A DNA stretch of 64,000 nt. Source: Haliotis rubra. Its lineage: Eukaryota. The notes beneath the pieces are model-generated. The model searched no databases. It had not been told where the DNA came from and was given only the letters and a program-made list of their open reading frames with translations. Positions within the stretch are counted from its first letter, which is position 1. Each line of letters opens with the position of its first letter. Below are positions 25,116 to 61,281 of this stretch, piece by piece. Position numbers and translations under genes: made by a program. The stretch covers positions 62,001-126,000 of the forward strand of contig NW_025764978.1 of NCBI RefSeq assembly GCF_003918875.1. Direction: 5' to 3'.

Positions 25116-25149
25116 ATTTTCAAGTGCATCTTTTTTTGTGGTCCGGCAG

Positions 25150-29844: not shown

Positions 29845-29900
29845 TCGTCACGATATGGCTGAAATATTGCCGATGTGACGTTAAATATTAACTCACTCAC
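29845..29900 (+). mobile_element. 56-bp retroposon 3' tail inserted in the LINE with 12-bp TSD
   Basis: tcttaagtactg at 29833-29844 and 29901-29912; ends ttaactcactcac. Confidence 0.85.
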
Positions 29901-31361: not shown

Positions 31362-32329
31362 AACCTGTATCGTATGTTCTGATTACCTGTATACATGTAT
31401 GCAGATGGGCGTGTATACATGTATGCAAATTGTATTATAATGGATGACATTATATGTATATTGGCCCGATGGCCTTTGTACGGAAATAAAGTTTTGATTG
31501 ATAGTGACATTCCCAGTTGAATGAACAAGATCAGTCTTTTGACACGCGAGGAATCATAGATGACTCCACAGCAACGTCTTTCGTTATGTGTCACTCGTTT
31601 TCAGTATTTTTTGGTTATCTTTTCATACCAGGGTTCTGAGCCAATTAAAAAGAATAAGTATATTGTTTTCACAATGTTTAACCAAATCCACAACTGGTCC
31701 CCAGATTCCAGGTTTTATTCGAGAATACACATACATAAATGTGGACTTGCATGATGGAAGTAAATACAAGGTGAAGGTCACAGCTTGCAACATGACGGGC
31801 CTCTGTACATCAGCAGCTACTTGGGACATTTTGGTTGACAGCTCTAAACCCAAAACAGGTAATCTGTTGTTGTGCACAATGAAATTTGGTGATTGTTTCG
31901 ATTGAATGAAGGTGTAAAAACAGACCATGACACTGCTGTTGTTCCTCTGCAGGATCCTTCGCCATAGAAACGGACCACGCAGTGAAACTTCAACGACATC
32001 AAACTGGATGGATGACTTGGAACAGTACAAATCTAAACCTAGCGTGGCTTGGATTCTCTGACCTACATTAAGGAATACAACATTATCTTATATCCGTGGG
32101 GTCTGGAGAATTCGGAACTGAGTACAATAAAGTAAGTGAATAACCTTGTGATACGGCATCACAAAGGACAACTGAATAGTCACATATTTATAATATAAAA
32201 TTATAACGGGTAGAGAAATCGTCTGGCCTTTTGTCAATAGACTAGGTTATAGTATTAGGTTTCAGACAACAATTTTAGTTGTATGCTGTGCACTGAGCAT
32301 CTTGACATAAACAAGTCTTACCTAAACAC

Positions 32330-33400
32330 TTTAAGAACGATAATGTTCATTATGTCAAGGTACCCTCCAAAATGAAGTTCACAGAGGACAGTTCGATGTA
32401 GATCTTCTGTAAGTGTTGTGGCCTCCACTGGTGTCTCTTAGAGGCACACAGTGTCTTCTTATGGATCTTAGAACGTTAGTAAACACACCCAGAGGAAGAT
32501 GTGTCCATTTCTTAACAACGTCAGTGGTGGATTGACATGCTGATGAGCACGTCGACACAGTTCGTTCCAGATGTGTTCGATAGGATTGAGGTCGGGGCTA
32601 CACGACGTCCAATCAAGAACTTGAATGCAGTCATTTCGTAGAAAATTCTGTCCAAGAATTGCCGAATGCAGTCTAGCGTCGTTTTGTTGTGCCATGTCTC
32701 TGCATAGATGGAAGCATGACAGGTTGCAAAATCTATTTCCTGTACTGGGCAGCATTAAAGTTTCCTCAAACGAGAACAATGGGAGAACGTCCGTGTGCGC
32801 AAAACGATTCCATGCCCCTTACGCTCCGCCACCAAATCTGTCCTCTTCACGGACGCAGACTTGAGTGTGACAATCACCTCGACCGCGGTACAGTCGGCCC
32901 CTGCCGTCGGCAAATATCAATGTGAAACGAGATTCATCGCTGAAGACAATCGAATTCCACTGTCTTTGACTGAACCTTTAACATTGGTCTATTATGGCGT
33001 CTTCAGGGCGAAGTCCAGCGGCATGCAAGCGATTTCTGACAGTTTGTGCAGCTATCCTTCCAACAAACATCGGAAACAGCTCCGGTTTGATCAATCTCAT
33101 CCTAAAATTATAAATTGTTTGTCGTGAGCAGTCAAAGGCTCTTGCAACAACGACTGCAGACTGACTAGCATCAAGTCTCCCCATAACACGTTGGCGTTCT
33201 TGATTTGAAAGGCGTGTCATTTCCAAACAAAAATTAAAATGAAAAGATTAATTTGTTTTTCCACCTCACATTCAATGTGCGTGTCCAGTTTAAGCAAACA
33301 TGCGGCTAATGACCTCATGAATTTGATTTTCACACGTGCATGTCGTGTTTTTTATCATTATAGGCCACAAAGTCAAGGTTTGCACTAATAAGGTTTGCAA
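32330..33400 (-). mobile_element. Decayed Tc1-family transposon
   Basis: MTRLSNQERQRVMGRL (HTH), ..SSDESRF-like segment, QQNDA..WTSCSPDLNPIEHIW; frameshifted. Confidence 0.9.
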
Positions 33401-33499
33401 TAATTGTGTGTCGACTAATTGTGTTGCCAATAGTCAAACTTTTTAATATACTGAGAACCATTAAAAACGCAATTGGTATTTGTTGTCCTGAAACTTACA

Positions 33500-34540
33500 C
33501 AAGTTCCATTGAAGATTTTTTCCTGCGATACAGAGGATGTATGGATAAAAAGCTGTTATTCTGTCCCATTTCGAGTTCGAGTCCCGGAGCATTCCTCTCA
33601 CATGAACTTTGATACTTAAAACTGAACCTTTGACATTTCTCGTAAACACAACCACATTCATGAAACACGCTGTGCACATGCATTACCTGCACCCAGGCCC
33701 TGTAAAAGCACAAGGAATTGTGGAACTCAATCACTTTGAGAAAATGCCACACTTGACACAAGACGAAAGGAATCAGGTTATCGGTATGGTCAGCCAAGGT
33801 GCTTCAGATGTGATGATTGTCAGGCACTTTAATGTGCATCCATCCACTGCAAGTCGACTCAGACAACGTTTTCGGGCTACCGGAAGCGATGCTGATCGTC
33901 CGCGACCTGGTGCACCACCTGTGATAACAGCTCGATAAAACCGCTATGTCAGAGTTTCACACTTGCGAAATCGGTTCCAAACAGCTGATGATTAGTTAAG
34001 GAGGACAATTGGGACAAGATAACGTCATTTCAGCGCCCAAAAGGTGCAAGGACGCCTTGCTGCCTTCAACATCCGGTGTCATCACCACCCTTATTGCATC
34101 GCCACAGACTTGCCAGACAGCGATGGGCAGCAAATGGGGCCAATCTTGGCAACAGGACATGGCCAGATGTAATTTTTTCAGATGAATCCTGGTTTAACTT
34201 ATCCTTTGCAGATGGACGTCAACAGATTTATCGACGTAAAGGAGAAAAGCTTGCGCCAAACTGTGTCCTTGAACATGATCGTTTTGGAGGGGGTGGTGTC
34301 ATGATCAGACCGCAGACCATCACAGGCTGCAGACCATCAGAGGCTGCAGCCGTTCCAACAGCTGTTCCTGAGATATGTGTGTCTTTCAATGCCCCAAAGA
34401 CTGCGAGCATGTCTTGCAGCGCTCGGTGGACATACACGATATTGACTGCAAGTGACCCCTCCTTTGTGTGATGTTGTTGCGTCACTGATGTTGTTGTTGA
34501 CTGGACATTTTCAGATGAAATTATTCACAGATGTTCACTT
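33500..34540 (+). mobile_element. Decayed, internally deleted Tc1-family transposon
   Basis: MPHLTQDERNQVIGM..DRPRPGAP, VIFSDESWF..DRFGGGGVM, then jumps to the C-terminal GGHTRY motif. Confidence 0.9.
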
Positions 34541-35567
34541 AAAACATATCTGCCAGTTAGGTTTATATATGTTGAAATTAGTGTGAGTAAAGAAAGTATA
34601 AATGTCAAATTGCATTGTTAATGGCTTCCAGTAAATGAAATAATAACGCGTACAGAAACTGTCTTGACATTAATCACAAATTTATAATAGGGCAGTGGAC
34701 TAACAGAGGTCTCCCACGAAGCAGCCGGAGTTGACAAGGGTGACGAAGGAGTTCTCCAGACCTTCAGTGTGCCCACCAAGACTCTGTCACATGATGTGAC
34801 TGTGTTTGTAGCTATCTGGGCAGTGAATGGGGTACATGGCATACTTTAGGATGTAACTCACGTGTGTATACCGGTAGATATTATGAATGAATTCTCCTTT
34901 TCTATCTTTATACCTGGTATTGTCTGTCGCTGACATTGATGATCAGTCAATAGAATGTTTCGTTGCGACTCGCAGGTTGGCCTGCAGAGTGATGCCTACC
35001 ACGCTGAACTGGTCCTGGAGGCAGACTCTACACTGTGGCTGGTGAGGAGGTGCCAGGCCTACAACTGTGAGGGACATTGTGTCTGTGCTGTGCAGGGCGG
35101 TACCTGTTCTGCCAGTAAAGCATGTGTACAAGACAAAACAGGTTTGTGGAGAAAAGAGAAATCAAACAGAAAAAGTATTAGGACATGGTATCACATTTCA
35201 GTCATTTTAGTAGCTAAACATCTCTCCCTTGTTTCTTGCATTTATGACTCTATGTCCAGTACATAAACTCACAACAGGTTAACAGAGCAGGAAGTACAAT
35301 AACAGGAGGATCTTCAATTGCATTCCTTCATGTAAATATTTCAGTTATACCACGTTGCCATGGTATGGGAATGAAAGTACCTAGTGACGGGTGTCCTAGA
35401 AGTATATGATAGACAATATACTTGTTTGTTTATGACAAACGTAACATAGTTTTCATACCTATTTCGCGCAGTTTTGCTACACCAGGTAACGACGCCTGTT
35501 TTCTCGATCCAACACGTCGTCTCTAATGACTAGCATAGGGCGGTAGGGATCTATTATATTCCGAAAG

Positions 35568-35726
35568 GGGCGGTGGGATAGTCTAGTTGCTAAAGCGTTC
35601 GCTCCTCACTCTGAAGACCCGGGTTCGATTCCTCAACTGGTGTGAAACCCATTCATTACCGGTGTCCCCCGCTGTGATATTGCTGGAATATTTCTGAAAG
35701 CGGCGTAAAACTAAATTCACTCACTC
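35568..35726 (+). mobile_element. tRNA-derived SINE family A
   Basis: A/B boxes; tail aaagcggcgtaaaactaaattcactcact. Confidence 0.85.
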
Positions 35727-36017
35727 TATTCCGAAAACATGGGTTTTATCACAGTCCCGGGAGGCAAAACGAATTGCGGTGAATCAGAGAATTTGACACC
35801 CATACCCACATATTTTTTTATTGTCTGAACATGTGACGGCTTTTCCTCTGTTTTGTCTGTTAACGAACTGGTAAAGTGTAATTCTGTCACAGGGGCCAAC
35901 ACTGTCACAGTCGTCGACACCATCAACCTCTTGTTTCCAGCAGAAGTTGACATGTCTCCTTTCAACACTTTCATGGCTGCCAACTGGTCTGTAAGTAACA
36001 CGGTATATATACTTACA

Positions 36018-36168
36018 GATATCCGAAATATCGAGACATCCGTATCGAGTTAAAAGAGTTTAAATTGAATAATGATAAATTATGAAGGATTTTGCCGGGA
36101 CCGAGATGTTTATTCGAGACAAGTGAGATATCGAGTTATCAGAGTTCGACACAACGGTGCTTGAGTGT
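36018..36168. mobile_element. Partial MITE (pogo/Tigger-like right half)
   Basis: Repeated tcgaga/tcgagtt subterminal motifs, tttgccgggacc, ending gagtgta. Confidence 0.45.
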
Positions 36169-39100
36169 ATGTCCTCAGATAACTCTATGTACCGTTTACC
36201 GGGAAGTGAGGACGATGGCACCAATAAAAGGCTAGGGAATGCGAATGTGAGGATCGCAATATACAGTGCCAAAGAAATCTTATTTTGACATGCGTTTAGT
36301 AATTTGAGTATTCAAGAAGGATAATTTATGTTGATAAACAACGTCTTTATTCTACTGTTCACTGTGGGTTTTAAGTGTTATCAAGCAATATATGACATAT
36401 ATACAAGACAGTACAGAAGTGTTTGGATGAGGGTATGGTTACAGGAGAGTGGAGTAGCATGTTAATTACACAATACGATCTCATGTTGGCAAATGTCCTA
36501 ACAGAAGAAGCCTGAAGTATAAACCAAAAAGATAAAAAAAGATTAGAACTGATTGGAATCCTTGAAGAGTAATGGTACGCTGGAGGCATGTAAGAGCATT
36601 GCTGACAGTTGACGAAACATCTTCTGATGGGCACTACTTCTTGCACTTTCCTGATTGTTTAGTCGTCGAGGGTGTGGTCTGATAAAGCTGAAGTTTTGAT
36701 ACTCAGCTCATGTGGTTTTGTTTTAATTCAGGACGTGAGGAGTATTGATGTTTTCCTATCATAAGCGTGGCTTTGGTTGTGTTTTAAATAATGTTTGTAA
36801 ACTTATACATTTGTATGCTTACACAGGCAGGCGTTTCCTGATTTTGTGGCTGACATTTCATTGGTAGGGGTTTAGGGAGGTCATTATGGGACGATGTCGT
36901 ATCGGCCAGTCTAGATATGCTCGTGTTTACTCATATGTATCACTATCATATGATAGTGGGTACCTGAAACGGCTGTATTCACATTAAAATCTTATATGAC
37001 TTATAAAAGTTTTAATAGAGGAAAAAAAATGTTGTTTATCAAGTTTAAAACACCCGAAAGACACAGGAAAAAACAAGTTGGCCTAACGCTTTTGGTATAT
37101 TTTGACATATGATCTCTGCTGGCAATCCAGTGTGTTATGAATAAAGCATGGTGCTAATACATTTATGGTGTCAACTGAATAAATGGTTTCGTTAGCGTTT
37201 AAAACAGCAGGTCGCTGTTAAATATTCATCCATATCATTATCTTACCTTTCCCTATTTCAGTACCATTCACTGATGTCCGTAGCCAAATACAACAACGGG
37301 ATGATATACTTTGATTCTTGTTGAGTACAATATTGGGCATAAGGCTCACGAGAAGAACAGATAAGACAATGAAGTCTCCAAGGCAATTTAGCGAAGTGCA
37401 TAAACAGAAAATCTTTTCATTATAAACCTTCTCATACCTATAGCATATGTGTTGTTTTGCAGCTACGAATACAGTGTAGGAGTTAGTGAAAAGGATTTAC
37501 CGGATGGAGTGTTCAAGAAATCTTCCCAAAGAGTATGGTTTGATGCAGGTCAACAAACATCAGCGATTTTGTCCTTGGACAAAGGTCAATGTAAATTATG
37601 TTTTTCCTTTGTTATCAAAAGGGGTATTTTTTCATCTATTTGAACTGTTCATTTATATTCTTCCTAATATGATCCAGTTGTAAAATAATATCAATGCATT
37701 TCGTGCCTTAAATCTTGCTGCTGCTGTGAATGGTTTCCTGGAGATATATATCAGAGACGTTTCAGTCAATGTGATGTAGCCTCCCCTGTCGTGTATTTTT
37801 TTCACAAAGGCAGTGATGTCATTAAAAGAAATTCCGTTTAACTTTCTTTCTTTCTGAGGTATTTGAAGTACCTCATCGCTTTTCATAAAGACATATGGTT
37901 TTCATATTTTATGCCAAGACGCATGTAACATTTACAAAGAGGCGGTCATCACAGCTACATTCAACAATATATATATATGAAGGGGCCAGCCGTGACCTAT
38001 TTTGAGAAGTCAAAATGTTTCGTATTACATTCCGGAGAAGGGTTCAGTGATGATTGGGATGGGGCTGTCTTAATACATGCTATTTCTTTGTTTCAGGTAG
38101 CTTTCTGACACCTGGAATACAATACTCCTTCTTCGTGAAAGCTTGGTAGAATAACAGAAATTACAGCATCTTCAAGTCAAATGGTGTCACTTTCGTTACA
38201 TCACCACCCACGGTAACAAGAAAGTCAGGGAGAACTGTAAGTGCATTCTGTGGTACATACTGTTTCCCATTAAGAAACGTTAACACTTTCATAGTCACGG
38301 ATTTCTAATTAAATACATACAATTGTCAGCATTACTTTCCCCTTATACCCGAATGAATCAGGCTCGCCGGATGTTAGAATTTTCTCCTGTCGTTGCTATT
38401 TTGATTTGTATCATCACTACATAACTGACAGACTCAAATATTAAACAGGTGAAGGAAGTCCTAAACATCAGTGACTCCAAAGACATAGACTTCCAGACAC
38501 AGAACAACACACTTGTCGTAACGTGGTCTGGACATTTCCTGCCTGGTATAAGCAGCATCCATCGATACAGGGTCTACATCAGCACGCACACAGGAGGTAT
38601 TAGGATTACTGATCTTTGTTCATCGCATTATGTACGGGAGTTTTGAACTCGCATGATCCATGGGTGTCATCAAGCCCATAGCGCACTGAAGTGATCTAAT
38701 CGAATGAGAGAGTTTCAAATGAAACATTTATGTAAATCATACTCCATTTGATCACTGATACATTTCAAATTTATATTTACTAATTTAGTAAAGAGATACT
38801 GCTCAGGGTCACATAAATACAAAGCAAGTAAGGTTCTGTTTCTAGTACTGTTTCTGCAGTTAAAGAATGACGATATGTTACCATTAGTAGATAAACAGGA
38901 TTTCATAGTTTTACACATATCTAGGATATCTTTAACATAGTTTCCTTTGACATGCTTATTTGTTAACTTTGGCTAAGGCGATCCTGAACCCAGTGGAACC
39001 AGGATCGGATCATGTCCACATCAATTTGCTATTTGGATGTACAACATAAACAAGCTCTCACAATTGGTTGTTTAAGTCCATGGCATGTCTCGACCTAAAT

Positions 39101-42100
39101 CGATTTTTTACAAGTAACATGATAAAATGGATAATTGCTTACTAGCTTATTAAACACCATTCAATATCTCCAAATCTATTTTACTGACTGGATGTAATGT
39201 GCCTGTTTTATAAGTATCCACTTTCCTAATATGTTTACTACTATGTTGATGTTCTCAGGCCACAGTATCCACGAATCAGGGGACCTGACCTCCACCATCC
39301 ATACGGGGACAGGTCTGAGTTTACGTCCAAACACAGTCTACTACTGCAGTGTCCTGGCTTACAACAAGGCTGGTCTGGTCAGCTGGGCCTATTCTGATGG
39401 AGTACAGGTGGACGTCATGCCTCCAGTGGCAGGCAGAGTGAAGGATGGAGCAGGTACGATAATGCGAATATAACTGTCTGTTAAGGGAATGCCCACTACA
39501 GAAATGAAAACAGCAGGTATTTTCAGCATTAAAGACGCATTATACATCCATATATTTCTAGCGTGTGGGAACACTGCAAGACTGTATCTTATACATCTGC
39601 AGATATCCACGACCAGGACTACCAGAGTTCTACATAAAAAATCTCTGTCTTCTGGCACGGCTTCTCGGACACAGACTCCACAATCGTCAAGTATTTCTGG
39701 TGTGTGGAGACAATCAACGACACATCAGATTGCAGTGTGATGGACTGGCTGGATACTGGACTGCACACATCCTTCAGTATATCGCTTCCAACTCCATTGT
39801 CTGCTGGTAAGTATATGGTATGTTGCATCTAACATATTGAGCCCGGACATAGTAATATATTTCCTAACATCCAATGTACTGACTATTTTTACAGGTACCA
39901 TATGGAACAAAGTGTATGCTGTAGACGTGGTTGGCCATGCCTCTGACGTAGCTGTATCTGATGGAGTTGTCATCGACACATCACCCCCGGAACCTAAGGA
40001 TGTAGCATATCTTGGAGACAATCTGGTAAAGAACCCATCTTTCGAGGTAGACGATATTACAGGAAATACATCAAAATGCAACCTCGTCATACCAACATCA
40101 TGGGAAACTGACACAGCGTCCTGTATCAGGGTTAAGGCGCCGGATTCACCTTTAGCTAAAGATGGACATATGTTTGTGTCCGTAAGTGGAAGCATCCAAC
40201 AAACGATCTCAGGTCTTGAGGTTGGGAGGCATCACTGTCATGGCCATGAATGCTGCTGGACTGACCACTGTTTCCCATGCACAACCCATCGTTGTAGATC
40301 TGACTCCGCCATTCTTCAGTCATATCAGTGATGGGCCAGGTAAATTCTCCAAAACACGTGAAAACAATGTCGCTTTACTACACATTCGGTGATGTCCCAT
40401 CCGTGTCACTTCCTTATCATCACATTTTGGCCCAGAAAGTGATTGCAAGGTCAATACTCCAAGACAATTGATGACGGTCACAGAAAGGTCATAGGTTGCA
40501 ATGCTTGTTCATGTGCCTTAGAATACTTATGGGAAGTAACGACACAAAACTAGCCATAGGGCGAAACATGTCATCAACATATGAGACCAGGTTGGAAATG
40601 AAATAGTAACATAAACAACAGGCAGCATATTACAGTACATGTTCAGTTTCTTTGTTGATACTTGCTGGAAATAGTTAACGAGAGACAATCTAAAGTGACT
40701 GAACCCAATACTAGCAATGAGCATTTAGTGCTGATAGGCAGTGAACGAATATCTGAACTGAGCAACCGTAAAGTGATGGCTAATTAATACCACTAACAAG
40801 ACACACAAACAGCTAATTAAATGGACTGTGTCCAGTAAACGGACTGAAGTGAAGGGATGAAACAAGCTACTTAAAGGTATCAGCCACATGTACTCTTAGT
40901 AAGGAGACATACATGACTATACATACAAGAGATATATCTAAAGAGCAGTAGGTAATCTTGCTAGGGAGTGACGTGGTGATCAAAGTTATTAATCATTTTC
41001 AACAAGTAACATTTTCAATAAGATTCAGACACAAAGTATAGAACTGATAAGCTAATTAGAAAAAATGAAAATATAATAGTTCACTAATAGCGTAATTAAC
41101 ACAAAAGCACAGAATGGAAGCGGAACAGGCCTGCGATTGCCGCACCTTCGAGAGTTGTGGATGGTGAGGTGCTATTGTTAAGCATACCTGAATAACGATG
41201 AGCGATATATTTGTATACACACTATTACTTGCATTATTTCGGAAGGTTTTTTAAGTTTAGATTGTCGCTTTCTGAAGTGTTGATTTATGTCATTTCTTTG
41301 TGTTTAGGCTCAGATGAAGATCATCAAACATCAAGTGTGGTTAGCGTCAACTGGAAAGTGACGGATGGAGAGTCAGGTGTCGATCACTGCGACTGGGCTA
41401 TTGGTACGTAAATGCCCGCACCGTAAATGCCCAAACCACTTGCAGTACACATATGCGACATTGTCCGATGTGCACTTGGAGACTGGCTCGTCATACAACG
41501 TCTGTGTAGTTCCTGTAGACATCTTTGGTACGACTGGAGAGAGAACTACTTCCTACTTTACAGTTCCCAATGAATCACCTGATGTATCTGGTAAGTATTG
41601 ATAATGTTACACAATCAACGTTGTGTTATTGTTCGGACATGATATTATGTGTTTATATCTAGGATAAGTTATTCTTTGACAAAAAAAAAGCAAAACGTTT
41701 TCAGGTTCTAGAAGCGTGAATGTGGTCTGCACGTTTAGAGACATATTGTGGTAGTTTGGGAAGTGATTATGTCAGTTTGACTCGTTAAGCAAATTTGTCT
41801 GTGTTTAATAGTATTTTATTCTTTGTGTCTTTGATGTTAGAAAGACAGGTGGTGTTTGACCAGACCAGTAAAGTACAATTGTTTGAGGCATTTATTTTGT
41901 GTATGCAATACCGTCATTAGAATTTCGGTTACACTTCGAAATGTACTGGTTATACACACGGTCGTAATATTGCTGTTAAAGCGGCGTAAAACTAAACTCA
42001 CTCACTCACCTTTGTTTCAGATTCTGTGGCAAATGGTGAAGTCCTTGCCAACTTGCTTTCGAAAGTGCAGATCAGCTGCCTGGGAAAGCGGATGAAACGC

Positions 42101-48970: not shown

Positions 48971-49170
48971 TGAATGGCTACAATATATACATTGCAAACA
49001 AAATGCACCCCTAAATTTGTAATGTCTCATACCGACGGATGGGAGACCATCAAACAATGTGACCCCATACAAATGTAGTGTGTCATACACTGGGGTGGTA
49101 CATGAGCTTTTACACAATATGAACCCCAATACATGCTACGTCTGTATACGGGGATGTCTTATTGTGCCTC

Positions 49171-49351
49171 TCAAGCATGTAGCGTCTCATACACAGGGGG
49201 CTGCACATGGTCCATCTTCTCGTACACGTGATCCGGCTGGGTCACACTGGTTATTCCATCTCCTGCATCTCCCGTGTCATTCTCGTAGGTGGGGTTTCTC
49301 ACGGCACCAGCAGTAACGCCTGTCTTCTTCTGCTTGTTCGTAACGACCATT
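49171..49351 (-). CDS. Last exon, cytoplasmic tail ..RNPTYEN..HVYEKMDHVQPPVYETLHA*
   Basis: tttacag/ acceptor, phase matches TM exon, TGA at 49171-49173. Confidence 0.88.
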
Positions 49352-52300
49352 CTGTAAACAAGTTGTTAAAATATTAACTCGTATTCGTTGCTGACACGCA
49401 AGCAAATATTCAATTGATGAACATAATTCAATTCAATGCCAAAACTGTATTACATCCTGATTTTATAGCTCCTAATTTGATAATAACAGTGTAAACAAAA
49501 GTAATTGTATCCTAAAATTAATCCGAATTTTATGTTATATATAAAAAGTGAATTTTAACTAAATGAGTGAGTGAGTTGGCTTTTACGCCGCTTTTAGCAA
49601 TATTCGAGCAATATCACGACGGGTTTTAACTGAATGAAATACTTGACTCTTCTTTCTTGTGGGTCCCTACATTTTAACCTTAATGAAAGAATATTGGTAT
49701 CTATGGTTACCTTCTACATCTGACCAGGAGGATCACGAGAACCAGCACAACCAATCCCAGAAAGACACATACAGACACGAGCGCCCAGACAACAAGGTTC
49801 CAATCTGCAGTACAACATGACAGGTAGACATATTAACAGCCACACAAAATGTGTCACGGTGTGGTCCTGTGCATGGCAGGTAGACATATTAACAACCACA
49901 AAACCATGTGGTGGTGTGGTCCTGTGCATGGCAGGTAGACATATAACCAGCCACAAAACCATGTGGTAGTGTGGTCCTGTGCATGGCAGGTAGACATATT
50001 AACAACCACAAAACCATGTGGTGGTGTGGTCCTGTACATGGCAGGTAGACATATTAACAACCACGAAACCATGTGGTGGTGTGGTCCTGTACATGGCAGG
50101 TAGACATATTAACAACCACAAAACCATGAGGTGGTGTGGTCCTGTGCATGACAGGGAGACATATTAACAACCACAAAACCATGAGGTGGTGTGGTCCTGT
50201 GCATGACAGGTAGACATATTAACAACCACAAAACCATGTGGTGGTGTGGTCCTGTGCATGACAGGTAGACATATTAACAACCACAAAACCATGAGGTGGT
50301 GTGGTCCTGTGCATGACAGGTAGACATATTAACAACCACAAAACCATGAGGTGGTGTGGTCCTGTGCATGACAGGTAGACATATTAACAACCACAAAACC
50401 ATGAGGTGGTGTGGTCCTGTGCCTGACAGGTAGACATATTAACAACCACGAAACCATGAGATGGTGTGGTCCTGTGCATACAGCCCAGGTCACAAATCAG
50501 TTGAAGTTAAACAACGTTGGTCACATAGAGTCAGTGTTGACGGTGTTCGGCAGCTTGACTCCTGAGAGTTTCTATGACTTCCGTCCTGACACACAACGAA
50601 GCATTCGTGACACACGTGGTCTGACACACGCGAATGGGTACCCGGCGGGATAAGTCAGATAACTGTCAAGTTTCTAGCTCCTCACAGGCAGCGTGAATAA
50701 AGGCGCTTTATGAATAGCCATCATTGTCTTTATTATTATTCCAAGACAACACCGATGCCAACTTCACCACAGTGGTGGACATCACTGACCAGGGTACTGT
50801 TCAAAGCAGTATAGTCTGTTTGCAGTGAAAAACGTATCAATGAATTTTACTTTAAACAAAAAAGTAAAATCAGATAAAGTGAAATTACGATTGCGAATCC
50901 TCATAATTTTACCTTTCCAATTGAACATGTAAATCTCAGAATGTTATTCAACTTAGGATAAAAGTTGTTTGACAAACGATCATACTTACAAATCGCTATT
51001 ATTGGTTTGTATTACAAGGGGGTATGGACATTAAATGAAACACCGAGAACAAGTAGGGTTGGTTTAAGTTAACGCTCATAACGTACCGCACGTGCATTTG
51101 TTTCACTGTTCCAACTAATTCGCTTACCCCTTTGTAATACAAACCAATAATAGCGATTTGAAACCAAAGTTTTATCCTAAGTTGAATAAGATTCTGCTAC
51201 GCGCCTGCCAGGTACATAGAACCCAGCAACGCTGATGGAGCCGTGTAATAAAAAACCCTTCGTGATAACTAGCTTCATTGTTTATACCTTCATGATATAA
51301 TTCTTGAACCACGTTTCCGGCTTGACACGTGCCGTTAGCGGGATGACAGGGGGCGCCGCCAACACATTGGTCACACAGATTCCCGCAGCGCTCACCGTAG
51401 GTACCATTTGGACATGCTTTCAAAAAATACGCCATGTGTAAAGATCTCTCTGACGAATTCATTAGCCATCGTTCAAATCTGATAATCAAAACACTAAATT
51501 CATATTCATATCGTCTAGGTACTAAAAGCGATAGAGCCATATCAGATCTAGTGGACAGGTGAGCACCCGGAAGGTACAAAAACTTAAATACCTCCACCTA
51601 CATTCAGACCATTTAAGACAACATCAGGTGCACCCAACTTAAACCTAACGCTGATGGCCCGACCATTCATTGCGGTAAAGCATGGTGATGTCTCAGTCAT
51701 CTAAATACGCTAACCACCTTGGCCTGAATTATTTATCAGGTAATTTGAACGTCAGACTAGGATGTTATCTTTGTTCAAGATAAGAAAGCAACTCAACAAA
51801 AACTATAGTCGTAAATCTTTAGCTGAACATAGAACACCGTCGCAACTCTGTAGTTGAAAGGACATCACTGTCGTGATTCTGTAGCTTGATATTGTTCACT
51901 GTGTTCAGTCTATAGTTTAGTACAGATCAGTGTCGTAACTCTATAGTGTAACTCAGACTACAGTCGTGACGTACTTGTTTCGGATAGACTTCTGTCGTGT
52001 CTCTTTAGTGTAGCAGATAATGCTGTCGTAATTCTGTACTTTAACAAAGACTACTGTCGTAACTCTATAGTTTAACACAAACTGTGATTTGAGTACCGTA
52101 CACATTATACATTGCAACCAACACCCATGTTCAAGTGGACGCTAACTCAAACAGCTCGAGCGAATGCTAATAACACAGCTTTCTCACAGTGCCTTTGCTC
52201 GAGAGCTTCTGAACAATTTGTTGGAATTAAGTTTATTATAATCAGTACTATTATTTATTATAACTCCTTCATACACACCAGTAGTGCACGTGTCGCCAAT

Positions 52301-55300
52301 CCAGCCAGTGTCACACCCATCTGCACAATGGCCATCGATGTTGTCACAAGCACTTCCATTGAAGCATTTACCACATTCCTGGGTACACAGCCGACCATAC
52401 CATCCAGAGGGACACCCTGTTGAACGATACACAGATACAGCACGTTCACACTGTGTGATAGAGATACACTGCCGACCATACCACCCAGAGGGACAACCTG
52501 TTGAACGATACACACATACAGCACGTTAACACTGTGTGACAGAGATACACAGCCGACCATACCACCCAGAGGGACAACCTGTTGAATGATACACAGATAC
52601 AGCACGTTAACACTGTGTGACAGAGATACACAGCCGACCATATCACCCAGAGGGACAGCCTGTTGAACGATACACAGATACAGCACGTTAACACTGTGTG
52701 ACAGAGATACACGTCTTGATCTACAGTAAATCCACAATCAATGTTTCAATTGTCAACGTATGCCCATAGCTGATCAAAAGATATGTACTAATGTCTTAAT
52801 AATGTACTAATGTACAATATACGCTTAACTTGAGTCTACCTAATATATCATTACTTTATGTCCTGAAGACGGTAGCACGTATGCCCCCAAGAATGGATGT
52901 GTTAAAGTACACATGGGAGCGTGGCCCACAGCCTCCAGGAAGTACATCCACTGTCCCCCTGAAAGGAAATTCATTAGTCAGTTCATGGCAATATTTTGTC
53001 TTGTAGACGAAAGGTAAGTTTCAACATCGTTCTGAACGTGTACATATTTATAATGCAACTGGTATTCCGTAAATGAATGATAATTTAATTTTTCTTCAGT
53101 GACGCAAAACAGCTGATTTATTGTTAAGTGGCAGTAAATAGTGTTCATGTTTATTGTTGTGACTGTAAAATTATATACCGTAATAGTTTAACGGCAAGCG
53201 CGCTCACTGACACCCACAAACATGCATACGCATTTCAATACTGTGTCTGAATACAACGTAATGGATATTACATATGAGGCTCCATGTAACATTTACCTGT
53301 CTCCAAAAGGCCCAGCATACAGAACACCTTCGAACTCATGAACAGACAGATATGAAGTGTCGTTACGGTACACAGTGGTAACGTTCGTCTCCAAGTCCAG
53401 GGATCCCAAAGTGCTCACTGAAGTGTCGGCGTAGTACAGTCTGTGACCTGCGACAGAAGACGCTGTGTTCGTATCTGAGACAGCTGCCATACTTGACTTG
53501 ATAGATGGCAATAAACCTAAATCACTTGTCCATTATTATTCCAGCTAAATAAGGACCAGCAAGTCTTTCGTCAGAGTAACGACATCTTTGGAAGCCTGGG
53601 AGGCGTTTTGTATACTTGCCACATAAAGAAACTGTGCACACAGAAAATATAAAGATAGACAGACAGTGTCTTTATACATAAATAAAGGTGTGAACATAGC
53701 AAGTATTGGAGACAATCAAACGCGCATGCAGGTGCCAGGCGACGTGACGTCATTAATGGTGGCCTATGGACTTGCAATGTGTTACTGCACATGCAGCCTG
53801 TGCAGCTGCACACAACATGTGAAACTCAGACATTGCTGTCACTGTCGAAAGCTTGATCTTTGGTCATTCAAACGTTCACAAATTCACATGAGAATTCATA
53901 TGCACATCATGCCAAAATTAACATGTGCTCAACGTCACGAAACCATTGGAATGGTTCGAGCAGGCATGAGCCAACAACAGGTGGCAGCACATTTCAAATG
54001 TCATCGTAACACGATATCTGCATTGGTCAGTTGTTATGGAAACAGTAATGATGTCATCGACCACCCACGTTTTGGGCGTCCCCGAGTAACGACGCCAAGA
54101 CAGGACGGATGGATTCAGGTGAATAATCTCAGACACAGGTTCCAGACGGCAGTGACCACTTCCCAAACCATTCCCCAGGCCTTCAATGCTCATTTGGTAG
54201 TCTATATGCGTCGTCAATGCACTGCTGTGCTTCACGCGCATGGTGGCCATACCCGTTATTGACTTTGTCACTTCGTCGTGTGACCCCCTACTCAATTTTG
54301 AACTTCTGACGTCATCTTTACGGATATTGTTCATGTTCTTCATGAACTTCAGCTTATAAAGTGTCTACATCATTTCGTCTTTTCTGTGTTGTATTCCAAT
54401 TCTGAAGGAATTTTCTGTGTGCACAGTTTCTCTATGTTTCTGGGTCTTGCTCTGAGGATTGGACCTTTTAAAAAAAAACTTATGGTAGTAATGAATAGAT
54501 CGAGTCCAAAACACGGTTATCTGCCGCTACCCATTCTCTGCTTTGTGAATCCATCTGTTTATTATTTTAGATAATATCTTTAAAAGGACAAAAAGAACCC
54601 AACAAAACATCGAAAAGGTTACCAGCTCGAGTTATTATTATTTTCTATTTTGGTAAAAAACAAGAGTGACAAATCAGCTTCATTGACGGAGTGATTTCCT
54701 AGAGATATTTAAGATCTATTCAAAAAAAATGTGACTCTCTAATTGTCTTTTATATTCACATCCGCAGATGTTGAAAGACAAGGATTCTGGGCAAGGTTGA
54801 ATATGTAACCGTCTAAACAGCAAAACGTGTGAACTTAATTACCTTCCTTACCTTCAAACATCATACCAAAATGATGGCCATTCTTTTTGTTTAGTAGGGT
54901 GACATAGTTACTCCCGTCGTAGTTCATCATTGTGATTTTTGTGACAAATGCTAGAAACAACTTCCTGCAATGTAAAACAGTATTTCAACAGTTTGCTTTT
55001 CGCCGGTTGTCAAATCATTGTTGGCATACTTACTTTACATGGCTTTATCTTGAATCTGTTATTTAAATTTTAGTTGACTGTAATTCTTACTTGTTCCGAG
55101 TGTCGATCGCGATTCCCCATACAGGTGAATTTTCAATCGGAACCTTTGTCAGGATCTTTGTGTCCATGTTTATCTTCCACAAGGAGCTATTATCATCATC
55201 TTTCAGGTCGAACACAAAGACTGCCCTTAGTTCGGGATCAAGGGCCATTCCATATAAACCTAAAAAGTTGAACCAAAATAGTACTTCTTTAAATACAATC

Positions 55301-56981
55301 ACAAAAACGATACACACATCTGCTGATCTGAAGGGTGATCTCTATCAACATCACAGTGTTTACCTCAGTAATTTAAGATGGCTTCTTTGGTGGGTACGTG
55401 TTGGTGAGTTTATTTGTTTTAAGTTCGTAATTATCAATTTACATCCTTACTTCTGGAGACGTTCACCCACGTTTCGTAGTCTTCTCCTGAAGACTTGACC
55501 CTACAAACAGATTTGAGAACAAAGTCGGACCAGTAGACGTAGTCGTAGACCGGGTCGTATACAGGACATCTGGGGTTGGGGGTGTGGATCGGGAGAACAC
55601 TGCAGCTGGACCTGCCATCCAGGGTGCATCGATACACGCTCCCGTTGACATCTACACCTGCACCGCTGTCTGTGATAAACATTATCTTTTCTGTCGCTGA
55701 AAATGAAGAAATATCTATTATAATTCTTAAATCGACGCCCTTTGGGGCAATTAGTTATTTCGCCGTAATCAGCGACATGGATATTAACTTCAGATATAAG
55801 TACAAGGCTAAGTTCGTATATCTTGGCTGGCTGTTTAGGTCCCTATCATCACATTTCGTCAAAAACTACATGCGAGTTGAACACTATCTCTATCTGCATA
55901 GGCGGAGCCAGTTATCTTCAAAGGGGGTTGGGGGTGGTAGGGGGTTGGAGGGGTGTGTGTGTGTGTGTGTGGGTGCGTGTGCCAAAACCAGTTTTAAACA
56001 GCAATGTTTTTATATTCGTTACCCTAATTCTTATTTCAATCATCATTTTTTTTTGCATGGACCTAATATCAGGATGTACCTTCATTTACATTATCTCCAG
56101 GGAAAAGGTTCCTATAGAACCAGCCTATACTGTACCTGTAGTATATACATTCACTGTGTAAATAATACCACGGAGATAATTCTGGTGTGGCTGTCTCTAT
56201 CACAGCAAATATATTGATATGCATACATATATATTCAGAGTGACAATAATAGGACTGTACAGTGTATTTGTTAACAAACAGTCACACCTGATTAACATAA
56301 GGAAGTTTGGATTAAATAGGTGAGTCATAATATTTCCATATCATAGATTCGCAGTGTAGGCTATGATAGGTGGGTTATGTGGCATTGTGATGTAGGTTTC
56401 GACTGGGTTCATGTTAGGCTTTATGAAGAAAGTTCAGTAATGTATGGGAAATACGACTTGTTTGTCTGGAGCTACGTCTTTGCGATTGAATATTTACAAC
56501 AATTACATAGAGGTCCTTATTATATAACACTCCCTTGCTTTAACCTGAATTGTGTCATATTGTTACATTCCAAATTATGTGTTGTCTCCAACAAATATAT
56601 GCCAGGAACCGATGGAAGGATGGACAGATCGGATGGCATAAATGCTGCGCCATGCTGGATGCAGGTGAACTAGACAAATTGGTCCTAAATATACCGTGAC
56701 AGTGATTCCCGACACACAGAGCAATGTCGCATCTGTATCACTACCTCCTAGAAACGTGGGATGTGGGCAAAGCAGGTCAAGACGCGTCACATATTCACCT
56801 GACGAGCTTTGGGTACCGAGGAACCATGGTGCATGGAGTATCTACAAAGGTTCTACTGCTACTTACAACATAGCCCAGAGACATAAAAGTACTGAAGTAC
56901 CAACTTACCATTATTAGATTCAGCGGCAGCGATCAGGAGTGCAAGGGCACACAAGACGAAGACAAGTGTAGTGTCCGCCAT
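49171..56981 (-). CDS. Type-I membrane receptor: signal peptide, YWTD-like beta-propeller, 2 MEGF-type EGF repeats, TM, NPxY/ITAM-like tail (11 exons; one internal TAA)
   Basis: Exons 56981-56909, 55696-55451, 55259-55091, 54964-54852, 53447-53297, 52958-52855, 52416-52279, 51416-51288, 50815-50768, 49804-49711 and 49351-49171; all GT-AG with matching phases; 1446 nt = 482 codons; codon 285 is TAA. Confidence 0.85.
49711..49804 (-). CDS. Transmembrane exon DWNLVVWALVSVCVFLGLVVLVLVILLVRCRR
   Basis: ctgcag/ acceptor and /gtaacc donor; ~25 hydrophobic residues then basic stop-transfer. Confidence 0.9.
49814..50480. repeat. 55-bp minisatellite, ~12 copies, intronic and abutting the TM-exon acceptor
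   Basis: gtggtcctgt recurs every 55 nt from 49861 to 50466. Confidence 0.96.
51288..52416 (-). CDS. Exons 7-8, MEGF10/SCARF-type EGF repeats (second lacks its last two Cys)
   Basis: CPSGWYGRLCTQECGKCFNGSACDNIDGHCADGCDTGWIGDTC; CPNGTYGERCGNLCDQCVGGAPCHPANGTCQAG. Confidence 0.88.
52386..52712. repeat. 81-bp tandem repeat x4 containing a 3' splice site and the EGF exon start
   Basis: ccgacca at 52391, 52472, 52553 and 52634. Confidence 0.95.
52855..55696 (-). CDS. Exons 2-6, LDLR-class-B/YWTD-like beta-propeller
   Basis: MFITD, YDPVYDYVYWSD, GMALDPELRAVFVFD, GIAIDTRNKKLFLA, MNYDGSN, RLYYAD. Confidence 0.85.
53611..54445 (+). mobile_element. Internally deleted Tc1 element with TIRs, intronic
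   Basis: TIR core agaaactgtgcacacagaaaat at ~53627 and inverted at ~54410-54431; MPKLTCAQRHETIGM..GRPRVTT fused in frame to GGHTRY*. Confidence 0.9.
56909..56981 (-). CDS. Exon 1, signal peptide MADTTLVFVLCALALLIAAAESNN
   Basis: atcATGg Kozak-like context, hydrophobic core, /gtaagt donor. Confidence 0.85.
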
Positions 56982-58225: not shown

Positions 58226-58942
58226 TAGTCGTCAGGCTGCTGAAAAACATAACAATTATCTGTAAAACATGAAATTTAGCATATTTTGGATTTTAACACG
58301 AAATAGGGTTACCGAAACACAATCGTGGAAAGGCAATAGCTACATGTGCAGCTGGAAATCTTGCAATAATGTTAGTACTGTTTCATGGACGAAACTCAGG
58401 ACAGGGATGGAATACTGTTGCTTAGATACAAGTATTGCATGAGGAGGAGACAGGAATGCAAAATAGGTGTTCAAAATGGTGCCGGCATAGGTTAGACGAG
58501 TCTGTATGTGATAACGTCCAAGTATGCGATATTGATGCCTGTCTCACAGCCCTGGATCATGAAGTTTCCCAAGGATGAGCAACTGTGACATAGATATTTT
58601 TCTCAAAGTTTACAAACAGTTCTTGCAGTTTCTAATTACACAAAGAAGTAGAATCGATGTATTGCCCCTGTGTTTAGAAATTATTTTTATCCAAATTATG
58701 TCTTTTCAGTCTAGTCAGCAACAGAACAACTTTACACATGCGCTTTGTAAATGGTCCCGTCATAGGTCTGGTGACAATTCTATGCTTACAATCGCGTATA
58801 CTTTCAAGTCTCAAATATGGTTAGTACCAATATTTCATAGCGTATTTTTTACTACTAACGACTAACAATGTGTGTAAATCGTTTATGTGTGTGTTTCGTT
58901 AAACATTGATTTGAGGCACAGTAAAGGACGTTATCCTACATG

Positions 58943-61281
58943 TGCTATGAAAAAGGACAATTTGGAAAAACGTTTAGCAGACGATCTGTGTGGAGTTGCT
59001 AAGTATGGTGACTGTAAAACATTTTGGAACAGTTTAAAAAGCTCTCTACGGAATAAAAACAAAGGATGTCCAATAACACCGGATACTCTACAGTTATATT
59101 TTAAGGATCTCTTAAACCCATCTAAACTTCAAACAGATGACGACTTTGATCAACATGTTTCTGATTTTATAACTAACCATTATTGTGATGAGTGTGTGAA
59201 CTTCTCAGGTATAGATCAATTGTTGTCTGATAATATTTCTGAACTTGAAATCACTGAGGCTATTAGGAAACTGAAAACTGGTAAATCCCCTGGCGAAGAT
59301 GGAATTCCTCCAGAATTTTTTAAGATTGGACAATCGACGTTACTTGCTTTCCTTAAGCCACTATTTAACTCAGTATTAGACTCTGGAATATTTCCAGATG
59401 CCTGGAACTCTGCACTAACCATACCTCTATTTAAGTCAGGTTGTGCAACCGACCCAAGCAACTACAGGGGTATATCACTCCTAAATGTTTCAGGGAAAAT
59501 ATTTACATCCATATTAGATAAACGCCTCCGTCTATGGATAGACTTGAATGGTATATTAACAGAAGCACAAGCTGGTTTCAGGATATGCTACTACAGATAA
59601 TATATTTACCCTTCAGACTTTATGTTCCAAATATCTTTCTAAGCCTAAGGGGCGATTCTTCTGTGCTTTTATAGATTTTTAAAAGGCCTTCGACTATGTT
59701 GATAGAGCCAAACTTCTATATTTGTTACTTAAGTCAGGTTGCCATGATAAATTACACAATCTTCTTCATAATATGTATTCATCTGTAAAATCTTGTGTAA
59801 AGACTGGTAATTGTAAAACTGATATGTTCTCAACAAGTTCTGGAGTACGTCAAGGCTGCATTTTAAGCCCAATTCTGTTCATCTTTTTTTATAAATGAAC
59901 TTGTTGCAGAAATATATAAATCCTGTAAACATGGTGTGTTTATATCTCAAGACATTGATGATATTATGATGTTACTTTTTGCTGATGATGTAAATATGTT
60001 TTCCTATATAGTTAATGGTTTACAGCAACAACTTAATGTTTTGCATAAATTTTGTATTACGTGGGGTTTGGGTGTTAATATTAAGAAAACTAATATTATT
60101 GTGTTTAGAAATGGAGGTGTGTTAAAAAAAGGATGAGGTATGGTATTATGGTAATACAAGGTTGAAATGTGTTTCGTATTATAAATATTTGGGTTTAATA
60201 TTCTCATCCAGACTAAATTGGTCAACAGCCTGTAAACATTTATCTGTTCAAGCATCAAAGGCTATGCAATCTGTATATCAGTTATTCAAAAAGAATTCTT
60301 TTATTTCTTTCAAAACGGCCTGTACCATCTTTGATTGTAAGATTTTACCGATCCTTTTATATGGGTCCGAAATCTGGGGAACTAAATACTTTCATTGTAT
60401 AGAAAAGGTTCATGCATCATATTTTAAATGCTTCCTAAATTTGGGAAAGTATGCTTCAAATAAGGCTGTATTAGGGGAAACTGGTCGTTGCAATATATTT
60501 GTACTCACCAGATTACGAGTAATAAAATTTTGGTTGATATTATTAAAAATGGATTCTTATAGGTACCCAAGGCAAAGTTATATGTTCCTAAAGCTACAAG
60601 ATGATATTGGCAAGCTTAATTGGGCATCAGAGGTTAACTCAGTTACAGTTACTTTTTTCGACTGGATTTTCTCATGTGTGGATTTCACAAATGGTTGGAA
60701 ATGAATGTAATTTTTTAAATGTTTTTAAGCAACGTCTTCAGGACATTTTCTTCCAAGAATGGTCTATGTCTATAAATAATTCAAGTTTCTTAGAACACTA
60801 TTCTTCTCATAAATCTCTGTTAGAACCGGAGTTTTATATTATGAACCTACAAGACAAATCATTAATACGGGCGTTGTGTAAAATTTAGAATTGGCTTTCA
60901 TGATTTTAGAATTCACTATTTACGCAAACCCAATAGAGCTTTCAGTGATGTAAATGAATCCATCTGTAAAAATTGTAATACAGGTAATATTGAAAGTGAA
61001 TTTCATGTATTATTTGTGTGTACCAAGTATTTAGATTTAAGAAGTAAGTATTTATCATTTGTACAAACACCTGTAAGAGATGAACAAACATTGTCCAGTC
61101 TGTTAAATTCTAAAAATATTGATATTATCAAATCTATTGCAATTTATTTAAAACATGTCTTTAATGCAAGAAATGCCACCACAACCAACACGTGCATATA
61201 ATTGTAGCAAGTGTATTTGTACTATAGGCCTTTAGGCCCGAAATACTGAATAAAAATGAATCTGCATCTGAATCTGAATCT
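58943..61281 (+). mobile_element. 5'-truncated RTE/RTE-X-like LINE with 13-bp TSD
   Basis: GKSPGEDGI, NYRGISLL, QAGFR, GVRQGCILSP, LLFADD, YKYLG, C-terminal CxxC..E.EFH..C; aataaa then (ATCTGA)n tail; gttatcctacatg at 58930-58942 and 61282-61294. Confidence 0.93.

What the first reader, a model, noticed from the sequence alone, without database searches (positions are those of the whole stretch)
49180..49296. Cytoplasmic tail with NPTY and ITAM-spaced tandem tyrosines
Seen: NPTYEN (49285-49296), then YEKM-DHVQPPV-YETL just before the stop. Known: NPxY binds PTB adaptors (CED-6/GULP, Dab) and drives endocytosis. YxxL/I-x6-8-YxxL/I recruits tandem-SH2 kinases (Syk/Shark), YxxM is a PI3K-SH2 site and YxN a Grb2 site. 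Inference: an activating engulfment-type signalling tail.
Basis: partly seen in the sequence, partly recalled or inferred. Interest (0 to 1): 0.7.

Follow-up and report, generated by a model that had tools for sequence, protein, structure and literature searches.

The report
Abalone receptor tail, three conserved tyrosines
The last exon of an abalone-only surface receptor gene encodes a short cytoplasmic tail whose three tyrosine motifs (NPTY, YEKM, YETL) stay fixed across abalone species while the rest of the tail changes, so it probably docks adaptors for uptake or signalling; it is not a strict ITAM, and this copy has a stop codon upstream.

Summary
On the minus strand, 49351-49171 is the terminal coding exon of a Haliotis rubra type I membrane protein. 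It encodes NPTY (49296-49285), YEKM (49224-49213) and YETL (49191-49180), then a stop.

Spliced transcript contigs and NCBI protein models join this exon in frame to the TM exon (49804-49711).

I compared seven tails: five H. rubra paralogs, H. asinina and H. cracherodii.
- 31 of 47 non-motif codons change residue. Only 1 of 12 motif codons does (Leu to Ile).
- The two distal tyrosines are always 11 residues apart, while the linker after NPTY varies in length.

This pattern indicates selected short linear motifs rather than chance.

- The strict ITAM rule fails, because Met at +3 of the first tyrosine is invariant.
- The Grb2-type YxN is present in 3 of 7 tails.
- There is no EMI domain, and the tail has no detectable homolog outside this small Haliotis family.
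- A 40%-identical H. rufescens relative lacks NPxY.

The window's own copy carries an in-frame TAA (52858-52856) upstream of the EGF, TM and tail exons. Three paralogs read TAT there. NCBI annotates the locus as two separate genes.

The scan noted similar ITAM-like tails on other abalone EGF receptors elsewhere in this genome. Function is untested.

The parts
49171..49351 (-). Terminal coding exon: 59 full codons plus the last base of a split Arg codon, then stop TGA at 49173-49171. It encodes the cytoplasmic tail.
   Evidence: Sequence. Splice joint 49351>49711 with CT..AC ends in four runs. Identical tail in the NCBI model P0001.
49285..49296 (-). NPTY, a membrane-proximal NPxY motif. Val sits at -5 (Met in H. 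asinina).
   Evidence: Invariant in all 7 tails, with synonymous changes at the Pro codon in both other species.
49213..49224 (-). YEKM, a YxxM motif and the first half of the distal tandem.
   Evidence: HVYEKM is invariant in all 7 tails.
49180..49191 (-). YETL, a YxxL motif two residues before the C-terminus.
   Evidence: YET[L/I] in all 7 tails. The distance between the two distal tyrosines is always 11 residues.
49050..49170 (-). 3' untranslated region, at least this long.
   Evidence: Transcript contigs cover 49050-49329 and 49124-49351 (table 8).
49352..49710 (-). Intron between the TM exon and the tail exon (GT..AG on the minus strand). It holds a very high-copy short repeat at about 49564-49623.
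   Evidence: joint table, plus depth of 20,000-40,000 and loose ends at that repeat.
49711..49804 (-). Transmembrane exon (WNLVVWALVSVCVFLGLVVLVLVILLV followed by RCR and two bases of the next Arg codon).
   Evidence: Joints 49351>49711 and 49804>51288.
51288..51416 (-). EGF-type exon (CPNGTYGERCGNLCDQCVGGAPCHPANGTCQAG). It is skipped in some transcripts.
   Evidence: Joints 49804>51288, 51416>52279 and the alternative 49804>52279. Isoforms P0001 and P0011 lack it.
52279..52416 (-). EGF-type exon (CPSGWYGRLCTQECGKCFNGSACDNIDGHCADGCDTGWIGDTCTT).
   Evidence: Matches bivalve MEGF10-named proteins.
52417..52854 (-). Intron carrying an 81-bp minisatellite (52384-52712). Each unit repeats the acceptor and the start of the EGF exon.
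   Evidence: Copy number ranges from about 3 to about 90 among paralogs.
52855..52958 (-). Last propeller-side exon. It holds an in-frame TAA at 52858-52856 where paralogs read TAT.
   Evidence: The NCBI model P0010 (284 aa) ends at this stop.
53296..56981 (-). Upstream exons. The signal peptide starts at ATG 56981. SGL/YWTD-like propeller exons lie at about 55437-55754, 55090-55341, 54850-54984 and 53296-53449. Boundaries are approximate.
   Evidence: P0010 matches these pieces.

Best explanation
The exon encodes the cytoplasmic tail of a Haliotis-restricted type I receptor: signal peptide, SGL/YWTD-like beta-propeller, one to three MEGF-type EGF modules, TM helix, then a tail of about 63 residues. 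The tail is a linker-and-motif docking platform. The membrane-proximal V-R-N-P-T-Y most likely recruits a PTB adaptor of the GULP/CED-6, Dab, Numb or Shc type and couples the receptor to clathrin- or actin-driven internalisation. The distal pair H-V-Y-E-K-M and Y-E-T-L/I is most likely phosphorylated by a Src-family kinase and then read by SH2 proteins. The fixed 11-residue register would suit a tandem-SH2 reader (Syk/Shark, or SHP-2). The invariant YxxM would suit a PI3K p85-type SH2. This gives the tail Draper/MEGF10-like logic without family membership. Shown here: sequence, splicing, topology, and selective conservation of the motifs and their spacing. Inferred: every binding partner, phosphorylation, and the activating or engulfment outcome. 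In this window's copy, an upstream in-frame TAA probably prevents the tail from being made on a full-length receptor. The functional inference therefore applies to the intact paralogs.
For: - Splicing of the TM exon to the tail exon, in frame: joints; NCBI models P0001, P0008 and P0034.
- Motif-selective conservation: 1 of 12 motif codons changes residue against 31 of 47 others, with synonymous changes at Pro20 and Glu55. Counting gapped columns as variable (37 of 59), hypergeometric P is about 2e-5.
- The distal Tyr-Tyr distance is fixed at 11 while the NPTY-YEKM distance varies from 16 to 21.
- The +1 and +2 positions (Y-E-K, Y-E-T) are also invariant. That is stricter than an AP-2 YxxPhi signal would need.
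- A hydrophobic residue at -5 of NPxY is kept (Val or Met).
- A GULP-like PTB exon (6itu, E 1.8e-15), a Shc-like PTB and an SHP-2-like tandem SH2 are present in the same genome.
- An ITAM-Syk pathway has been shown experimentally in an oyster (PMC6994640).
- Draper and MEGF10 combine NPxY with an ITAM (PMC8092387, PMC6219719).
- The EGF modules match MEGF10/SREC/draper-named mollusc proteins.
Against: - No binding, phosphorylation or cell-type expression data exist.
- The strict ITAM rule is not met (Met at +3).
- All conservation comes from one genus and from close paralogs, so part of it is shared ancestry.
- The 40%-identical relative P0012 has no NPxY and different tyrosine spacing.
- No Syk/Shark gene was located in this genome; the search was inconclusive.
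- The tail has no significant similarity to any characterised tail.
- The window copy carries a premature stop, and the transcript contigs match none of the five assembled copies exactly.
Confidence: 0.45

Rival explanations
1. The tail is a pure sorting tail. NPxY and the two YxxPhi motifs are unphosphorylated endocytic or lysosomal sorting signals, read by Dab2/ARH-type PTB adaptors and the AP-2 mu2 subunit. The protein would then be a constitutively recycling cargo receptor in the LDL-receptor style, with no phosphotyrosine signalling.
For: Both YEKM and YETL fit YxxPhi, and NPxY is the classical LDLR internalisation signal (established knowledge). The ectodomain has an SGL/YWTD-like propeller next to EGF modules, as in the LDLR family: weak Ldl_recept_b and SGL hits and a weak LRP6-like hit. 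The strict ITAM rule is not met.
Against: AP-2 tolerates any bulky hydrophobic residue at +3 and most residues at +1 and +2, yet Y-E-K-M and Y-E-T are invariant, as is the 11-residue register. That is more constraint than two independent sorting signals need. There are no LDL-A repeats, and the Ldl_recept_b hit is below Pfam's cut-off.
Confidence: 0.3
2. The motifs serve another reader than those named. Possibilities include recruitment of an inhibitory tandem-SH2 phosphatase (SHP-2/Corkscrew), or a class II PDZ ligand at the C-terminus (L/I-x-A/V). The tail would then modulate signalling rather than activate it.
For: An SHP-2-like tandem SH2 gene is present. The C-terminal Phi-x-A/V is kept in all 7 tails. 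Draper-II uses an ITIM with Corkscrew (PMC8092387).
Against: Neither tyrosine fits the ITIM or ITSM rule (His or Pro at -2 instead of I/V/L/S/T; sequence). The PDZ idea rests on three residues only.
Confidence: 0.12
3. The tail has no function at this locus. The window copy is a decaying paralog, and its motifs are retained only because the duplication is recent. At family level, the conservation would reflect short divergence time.
For: There is an in-frame TAA at 52858-52856 and a weakened donor (A instead of G at -1) where three paralogs read TAT G|gt. NCBI splits the locus into a 284-aa and a 163-aa model. No transcript contig carries this copy's own variants. The tail exon differs from L002 by 5%, more than the adjacent intron does (1.6%).
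Against: The tail ORF is intact. Across species, 31 of 47 non-motif residues changed while the motifs did not, so divergence time was sufficient to erode unconstrained motifs. Intact full-length paralogs exist (P0034), and a family member is transcribed and correctly spliced.
Confidence: 0.13

Closest known systems
Draper / CED-1 / MEGF10 / Jedi-1 engulfment receptor tails
   Same: All are type I receptors with MEGF-type EGF repeats next to the membrane, and a tail that combines an NPxY with distal tyrosine motifs spaced like an ITAM. The readers in those systems are GULP/CED-6 and Syk/Shark (PMC8092387, PMC6219719, PMC4055271). A GULP-like PTB is present in this genome.
   Different: This receptor has no EMI domain; the head is an SGL/YWTD-like propeller. 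It has only 1-3 EGF modules and a tail of about 63 residues with exactly three tyrosines. The first half of the tandem is YxxM rather than YxxL/I. There is no detectable tail sequence similarity.
Canonical ITAM (Reth motif) as in FcR gamma, Ig-alpha/beta, oyster CgIgR
   Same: There are two tyrosines 11 residues apart, an acidic residue at -3 of the first in 6 of 7 tails, and a second half YETL/I. Oyster CgIgR (EGDYTELGQCDPETPYEKL) shows that ITAM-Syk signalling exists in molluscs (PMC6994640).
   Different: The first tyrosine has Met at +3 in all seven tails, so the motif fails Yxx[L/I]. No Syk binding has been shown.
LDL receptor family tails (FxNPxY)
   Same: The order of a YWTD-like propeller, then EGF, then TM, then a tail with Phi-x-N-P-x-Y is the same.
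   Different: There are no LDL-A ligand-binding repeats. The propeller matches Ldl_recept_b only below the cut-off. The distal tandem tyrosines are not an LDLR feature.
Bivalve MEGF10/MEGF6/draper-named F5/8-type-C plus EGF receptors (P0015-P0021)
   Same: The EGF modules are homologous (31-51% identity). The tails are about 50 residues long and carry two distal tyrosines 10-12 residues apart (Y[Q/E]EL ... YQNT).
   Different: Those tails have no NPxY, and their second half is YxNT rather than YxxL. The tails are not significantly alignable with this one, and the N-terminal domain differs.

Membership tests
Canonical ITAM | Two tyrosines separated so that Yxx[L/I] is followed by 6-8 (up to 12) residues and a second Yxx[L/I] | tested here: not met
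   YEKM-x7-YETL. The regex test is false for x6-8 and for x6-12 in all Haliotis tails. Met at +3 is invariant.
Canonical ITAM | Tyr-to-Tyr register of 10-12 residues, conserved | tested here: met
   The distance is 11 in all seven tails, although the upstream linker varies from 16 to 21.
Canonical ITAM | Phosphorylation-dependent binding of the tandem SH2 domains of Syk/ZAP-70/Shark | not testable with these tools
   No binding assay was possible. A Syk/Shark gene was not located in G000 among the SH2 loci examined, so this is inconclusive.
NPxY PTB-binding / internalisation motif | N-P-x-Y in a cytoplasmic segment with a hydrophobic residue at -5 | tested here: met
   V-R-N-P-T-Y (M-R-N-P-T-Y in H. 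asinina). It lies 22 residues after the RCRR stop-transfer signal and is invariant.
NPxY PTB-binding / internalisation motif | A PTB adaptor of the GULP/CED-6 or Dab/Shc type is available in the organism | tested here: met
   A PID exon at G000:C147:1586101-1586256 best matches human GULP1 (6itu, E 1.8e-15). A Shc-like PTB is at C2423.
Draper/CED-1/MEGF10 receptor family | N-terminal EMI domain | tested here: not met
   Pfam on the full-length relatives P0003 and P0012 gives only SGL and weak Ldl_recept_b hits, with no EMI.
Draper/CED-1/MEGF10 receptor family | MEGF-type EGF repeats before the TM helix | tested here: met
   A profile search hits MEGF10-, SREC- and draper-named proteins through the EGF region. 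BLASTP of P0034 against P0016 gives E 5e-25.
Draper/CED-1/MEGF10 receptor family | Tail homologous in sequence to known members | tested here: not met
   HMMER of the tail profile against 1.84 billion representatives found only three Haliotis proteins.
LDL receptor family | LDL-A (class A) repeats and YWTD class B repeats above threshold | tested here: not met
   There is no LDL-A hit. Ldl_recept_b scores 12.8-18.5 bits against a cut-off of 21. SGL scores 27 bits against 26.3.
PI3K p85 SH2 site (pY-[M/I/V/E]-x-M) | Y-[MIVE]-x-M sequence | tested here: met
   Y-E-K-M is invariant in 7 of 7 tails. Binding was not testable.
Grb2 SH2 site (pY-x-N) | Asn at +2, conserved | tested here: not met
   YEN in the window copy, YQN in L004 and H. 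asinina, and YQD or YQA in the other four.
ITIM / ITSM | [I/V/L/S/T]-x-Y-x-x-[L/V/I] | tested here: not met
   The -2 residues are His (HVYEKM) and Pro (PVYETL).

The most novel reading that the evidence does not exclude
A genus-restricted abalone receptor family has independently assembled Draper-like signalling logic on a different ectodomain, a beta-propeller in place of EMI. Its hybrid tail would use one fixed 11-residue tandem (pYEKM/pYETL) to recruit PI3K p85 and a Syk-type kinase, or to switch between them, while NPTY recruits GULP. This would be a convergent, minimal three-tyrosine engulfment module in a lophotrochozoan.
Probability: 0.2. Interest if true: 0.55.

Novelty: new variant of a known kind. 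Interest (0 to 1): 0.35.

Why it matters
If the three motifs work as read, this family offers a very small, naturally minimal tail in which PTB-adaptor recruitment and tandem-phosphotyrosine recruitment can be dissected in a mollusc. It would add a lophotrochozoan example to the question of how often NPxY-plus-ITAM-like tails arose on EGF-repeat receptors. For abalone biology, it marks a tandemly duplicated, fast-evolving surface receptor family as a candidate uptake or immune receptor. As it stands, this is a motif-level prediction on an uncharacterised gene, and the copy in this window is probably disabled.

Tried and rejected
- Pfam on single exons gave only sub-threshold hits.
- The tail profile against 1.84 billion representatives gave nothing outside three Haliotis clusters. 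The three further hits were spurious repeats.
- The word-based homolog search with P0003 found only Haliotis proteins. The profile search reached other molluscs only through the EGF modules.
- I tried to assign the transcript contigs to one of the five assembled copies. The variant pattern matches none exactly, so expression of this particular copy is not shown.
- I looked for a Syk/Shark gene among paired SH2 loci. The result is inconclusive, not negative.
- I rejected the ITIM/ITSM reading and the Grb2 YxN reading on sequence and conservation grounds.
- I rejected the antisense 85-aa ORF at 49059-49316 (+). All splice joints have CT..AC ends, so transcription is from the minus strand.
- A joined spliced protein model of the window gene was deliberately not built. 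Exons were searched by reference, and NCBI models of the paralogs were used for full-length comparisons.
- The TAA could not be re-checked against DNA reads.

Full report
**What is there**

The window is Haliotis rubra.

On the minus strand, 49351-49171 is a terminal coding exon behind an acceptor (tttacag|A). It encodes MVVTNKQKKTGVTAGAVRNPTYENDTGDAGDGITSVTQPDHVYEKMDHVQPPVYETLHA followed by a stop.
- NPTY is at 49296-49285.
- YEKM is at 49224-49213.
- YETL is at 49191-49180.

The exon upstream, 49804-49711, encodes a transmembrane helix followed by RCR. It ends in phase 2, so the junction reads ...LLVRCRR|MVVTNK.

**Splicing and expression**

Contigs of four transcriptome-like runs, laid on 49050-55000, show these joints, all with CT..AC ends (GT..AG on the minus strand):
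- 49351>49711
- 49804>51288, with an exon-skipping alternative 49804>52279
- 51416>52279
- 52957>53296
- about 53447>54852

A single 481-nt contig bridges the tail, TM and EGF exons.

These contigs differ from the window by about 5%, and their variant pattern fits none of the five assembled copies exactly. This shows expression of a family member, not of this particular copy.

The NCBI models P0001, P0008, P0011, P0033 and P0034 contain the same junction.

**Gene and family**

The gene runs from ATG 56981 to 49171. Its parts, in order, are:
- a signal peptide;
- exons of a beta-propeller that scores as SGL, just above Pfam's cut-off in the full-length relative, and as Ldl_recept_b below the cut-off;
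- one to three MEGF-type EGF modules;
- the TM helix and the tail.

I did not build a joined model of the window gene. Exons were searched by reference, and full-length comparisons used public models of the paralogs (P0034, 512 aa) and orthologs (P0003, P0007).

The genome has five copies: four on this contig and one on C571. Their tails are 83-90% identical. The propeller exon finds only these five loci.

A tail profile searched with HMMER against 1.84 billion representative proteins found only three real clusters, all Haliotis. Word-based and profile searches found:
- H. asinina (P0003);
- H. cracherodii (P0007, 73% identical to P0003);
- a distant H. rufescens relative (P0012, 40% identical to P0003).

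Beyond the genus there were only EGF-level matches, to mollusc and fish proteins named MEGF10, SREC, draper or Tie-like, plus a weak LRP6-like propeller match.

**Are the motifs more than chance?**

Across the seven tails:
- 31 of 47 non-motif codons change residue, and the linker after NPTY has indels;
- only one of the twelve motif codons changes residue (Leu57 to Ile);
- Pro20 and Glu55 change only synonymously.

A hypergeometric test that counts gapped columns as variable gives P of about 2e-5. This ignores relatedness, so it is indicative only.

The two distal tyrosines are always 11 residues apart, while the NPTY-to-YEKM distance is 16-21 residues. The conserved islands are R-N-P-T-Y, H-V-Y-E-K-M and Y-E-T-[L/I].

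Shuffles of the tail give NPxY together with a loose tandem in 0.02% of trials. I conclude that these are selected short linear motifs.

**What they are not**

- *Strict ITAM.* The ITAM definitions in the papers I read are YxxI/L-x6-12-YxxI/L (PMC6219719) and D/ExxYxxL/I-x6-12-YxxL/I (PMC6994640). The first half here is YEKM in all seven tails, so the strict rule fails. "ITAM-like register" is the accurate description.
- *Grb2 site.* The YxN reading holds in only 3 of 7 tails.
- *ITIM or ITSM.* Neither tyrosine fits.
- *Draper/CED-1/MEGF10 member.* The protein lacks an EMI domain.
- *LDLR-family member.* It lacks LDL-A repeats.
- *Conserved beyond the close family.* The distant relative P0012 has no NPxY, and its tyrosines are spaced 16 and 14 apart.

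Bivalve MEGF10-named proteins that share the EGF modules also end in two tyrosines 10-12 residues apart (Y[Q/E]EL ... YQNT), but they have no NPxY. The scan noted ITAM-like tails on other abalone EGF receptors elsewhere in this genome (not tested by me). A distal tyrosine pair may therefore be a recurrent feature of mollusc EGF-repeat receptor tails.

**Candidate readers in this genome**

- A PTB exon whose best solved relative is human GULP1 (E 1.8e-15).
- A Shc-like PTB.
- An SHP-2-like tandem SH2.
- CSK-, PLC-gamma- and RasGAP-like SH2 genes.

That result is inconclusive. ITAM-Syk signalling has been shown experimentally in an oyster (PMC6994640).

**State of this copy**

The last propeller-side exon ends ...TTC AGG ACA TAA A|gtaatg. 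Three paralogs read ...ATA TAT G|gtaatg at the same place. The window copy therefore has an in-frame TAA at 52858-52856, and an A instead of G at the donor -1 position. Both lie upstream of the EGF, TM and tail exons.

NCBI annotates the locus as two genes:
- a 284-aa secreted propeller that ends at this stop (P0010, LOC124280664);
- a 163-aa piece that starts inside the intronic repeat and carries this tail (P0001, LOC124280659).

No transcript contig shows the TAA version. All contigs that reach this point stop matching at 52857. The tail in this window is probably not made as part of a full-length receptor, so the functional reading applies to the intact paralogs.

**Mechanism**

My best reading (0.45) has two parts:
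- NPTY docks a PTB adaptor for internalisation.
- The fixed-register pair YEKM/YETL is phosphorylated and read by SH2 proteins, either a tandem-SH2 kinase or phosphatase, or p85.

The invariance of the +1 and +2 residues and of the spacing favours this over the main rival (0.30), in which the tail carries only AP-2 and Dab-type sorting signals. The two readings are not exclusive.

The remaining rivals are another reader such as SHP-2 or a PDZ protein (0.12), and no function (0.13).

All partner assignments are inference.

Noticed in passing
window 52856-52858 (minus strand): There is an in-frame TAA and a G-to-A change at donor -1, where three paralogs read TAT G|gt. NCBI splits the locus into LOC124280664 (284 aa) and LOC124280659 (163 aa).
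   Followed up: yes
window 52384-52712; L009:1-7300: An 81-bp minisatellite sits in the intron before the first EGF exon. Each unit copies the acceptor and the first 20 or so codons of the exon. Copy number runs from about 3 to about 90 among the five paralogs. One transcript joint (52579>52857) suggests that an upstream unit's acceptor can be used.
   Followed up: partly
window 49816-50483: A 55-bp tandem repeat of 12 copies at 94% identity lies directly upstream of the TM exon's acceptor.
   Followed up: no
window 49564-49623: A short, very high-copy element lies in the TM-tail intron. Summed contig depth is 20,000-40,000 in all four RNA-like runs, with many loose ends. It is probably a SINE.
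   Followed up: no
window 49804>52279 joint; P0033, P0002: There are exon-skipping isoforms. One drops the second EGF exon. NCBI models of paralogs join the propeller straight to the TM exon, with no EGF module at all.
   Followed up: partly
window 53627-54422: An intronic stretch has raised depth in the RNA contigs and a plus-strand ORF that looks like a Tc1/mariner transposase N-terminus by eye.
   Followed up: no
window 49174-49182 (C-terminus L-H-A): The last three residues are Phi-x-A/V in all seven tails (LHA, LNA, IHV). This may be a class II PDZ ligand.
   Followed up: no
G000:C147:1586101-1586256; C2423:2494010-2494153; C2467:819896-822571: The same genome holds a GULP1-like PTB exon, a Shc-like PTB exon and an SHP-2-like tandem SH2 gene.
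   Followed up: partly
window 15000-41000 (+): A long plus-strand gene carries many repeated extracellular-looking modules (recurrent ...DGV.VDTTPP... pieces). Reverse-transcriptase-like ORFs lie at about 28700-29600 and 58900-61200.
   Followed up: no
P0012 (H. rufescens) tail: The distant relative has a different tail with YQDV-x12-YQNI and a C-terminal YEMC. Only the final V-Y-E aligns with this family.
   Followed up: partly
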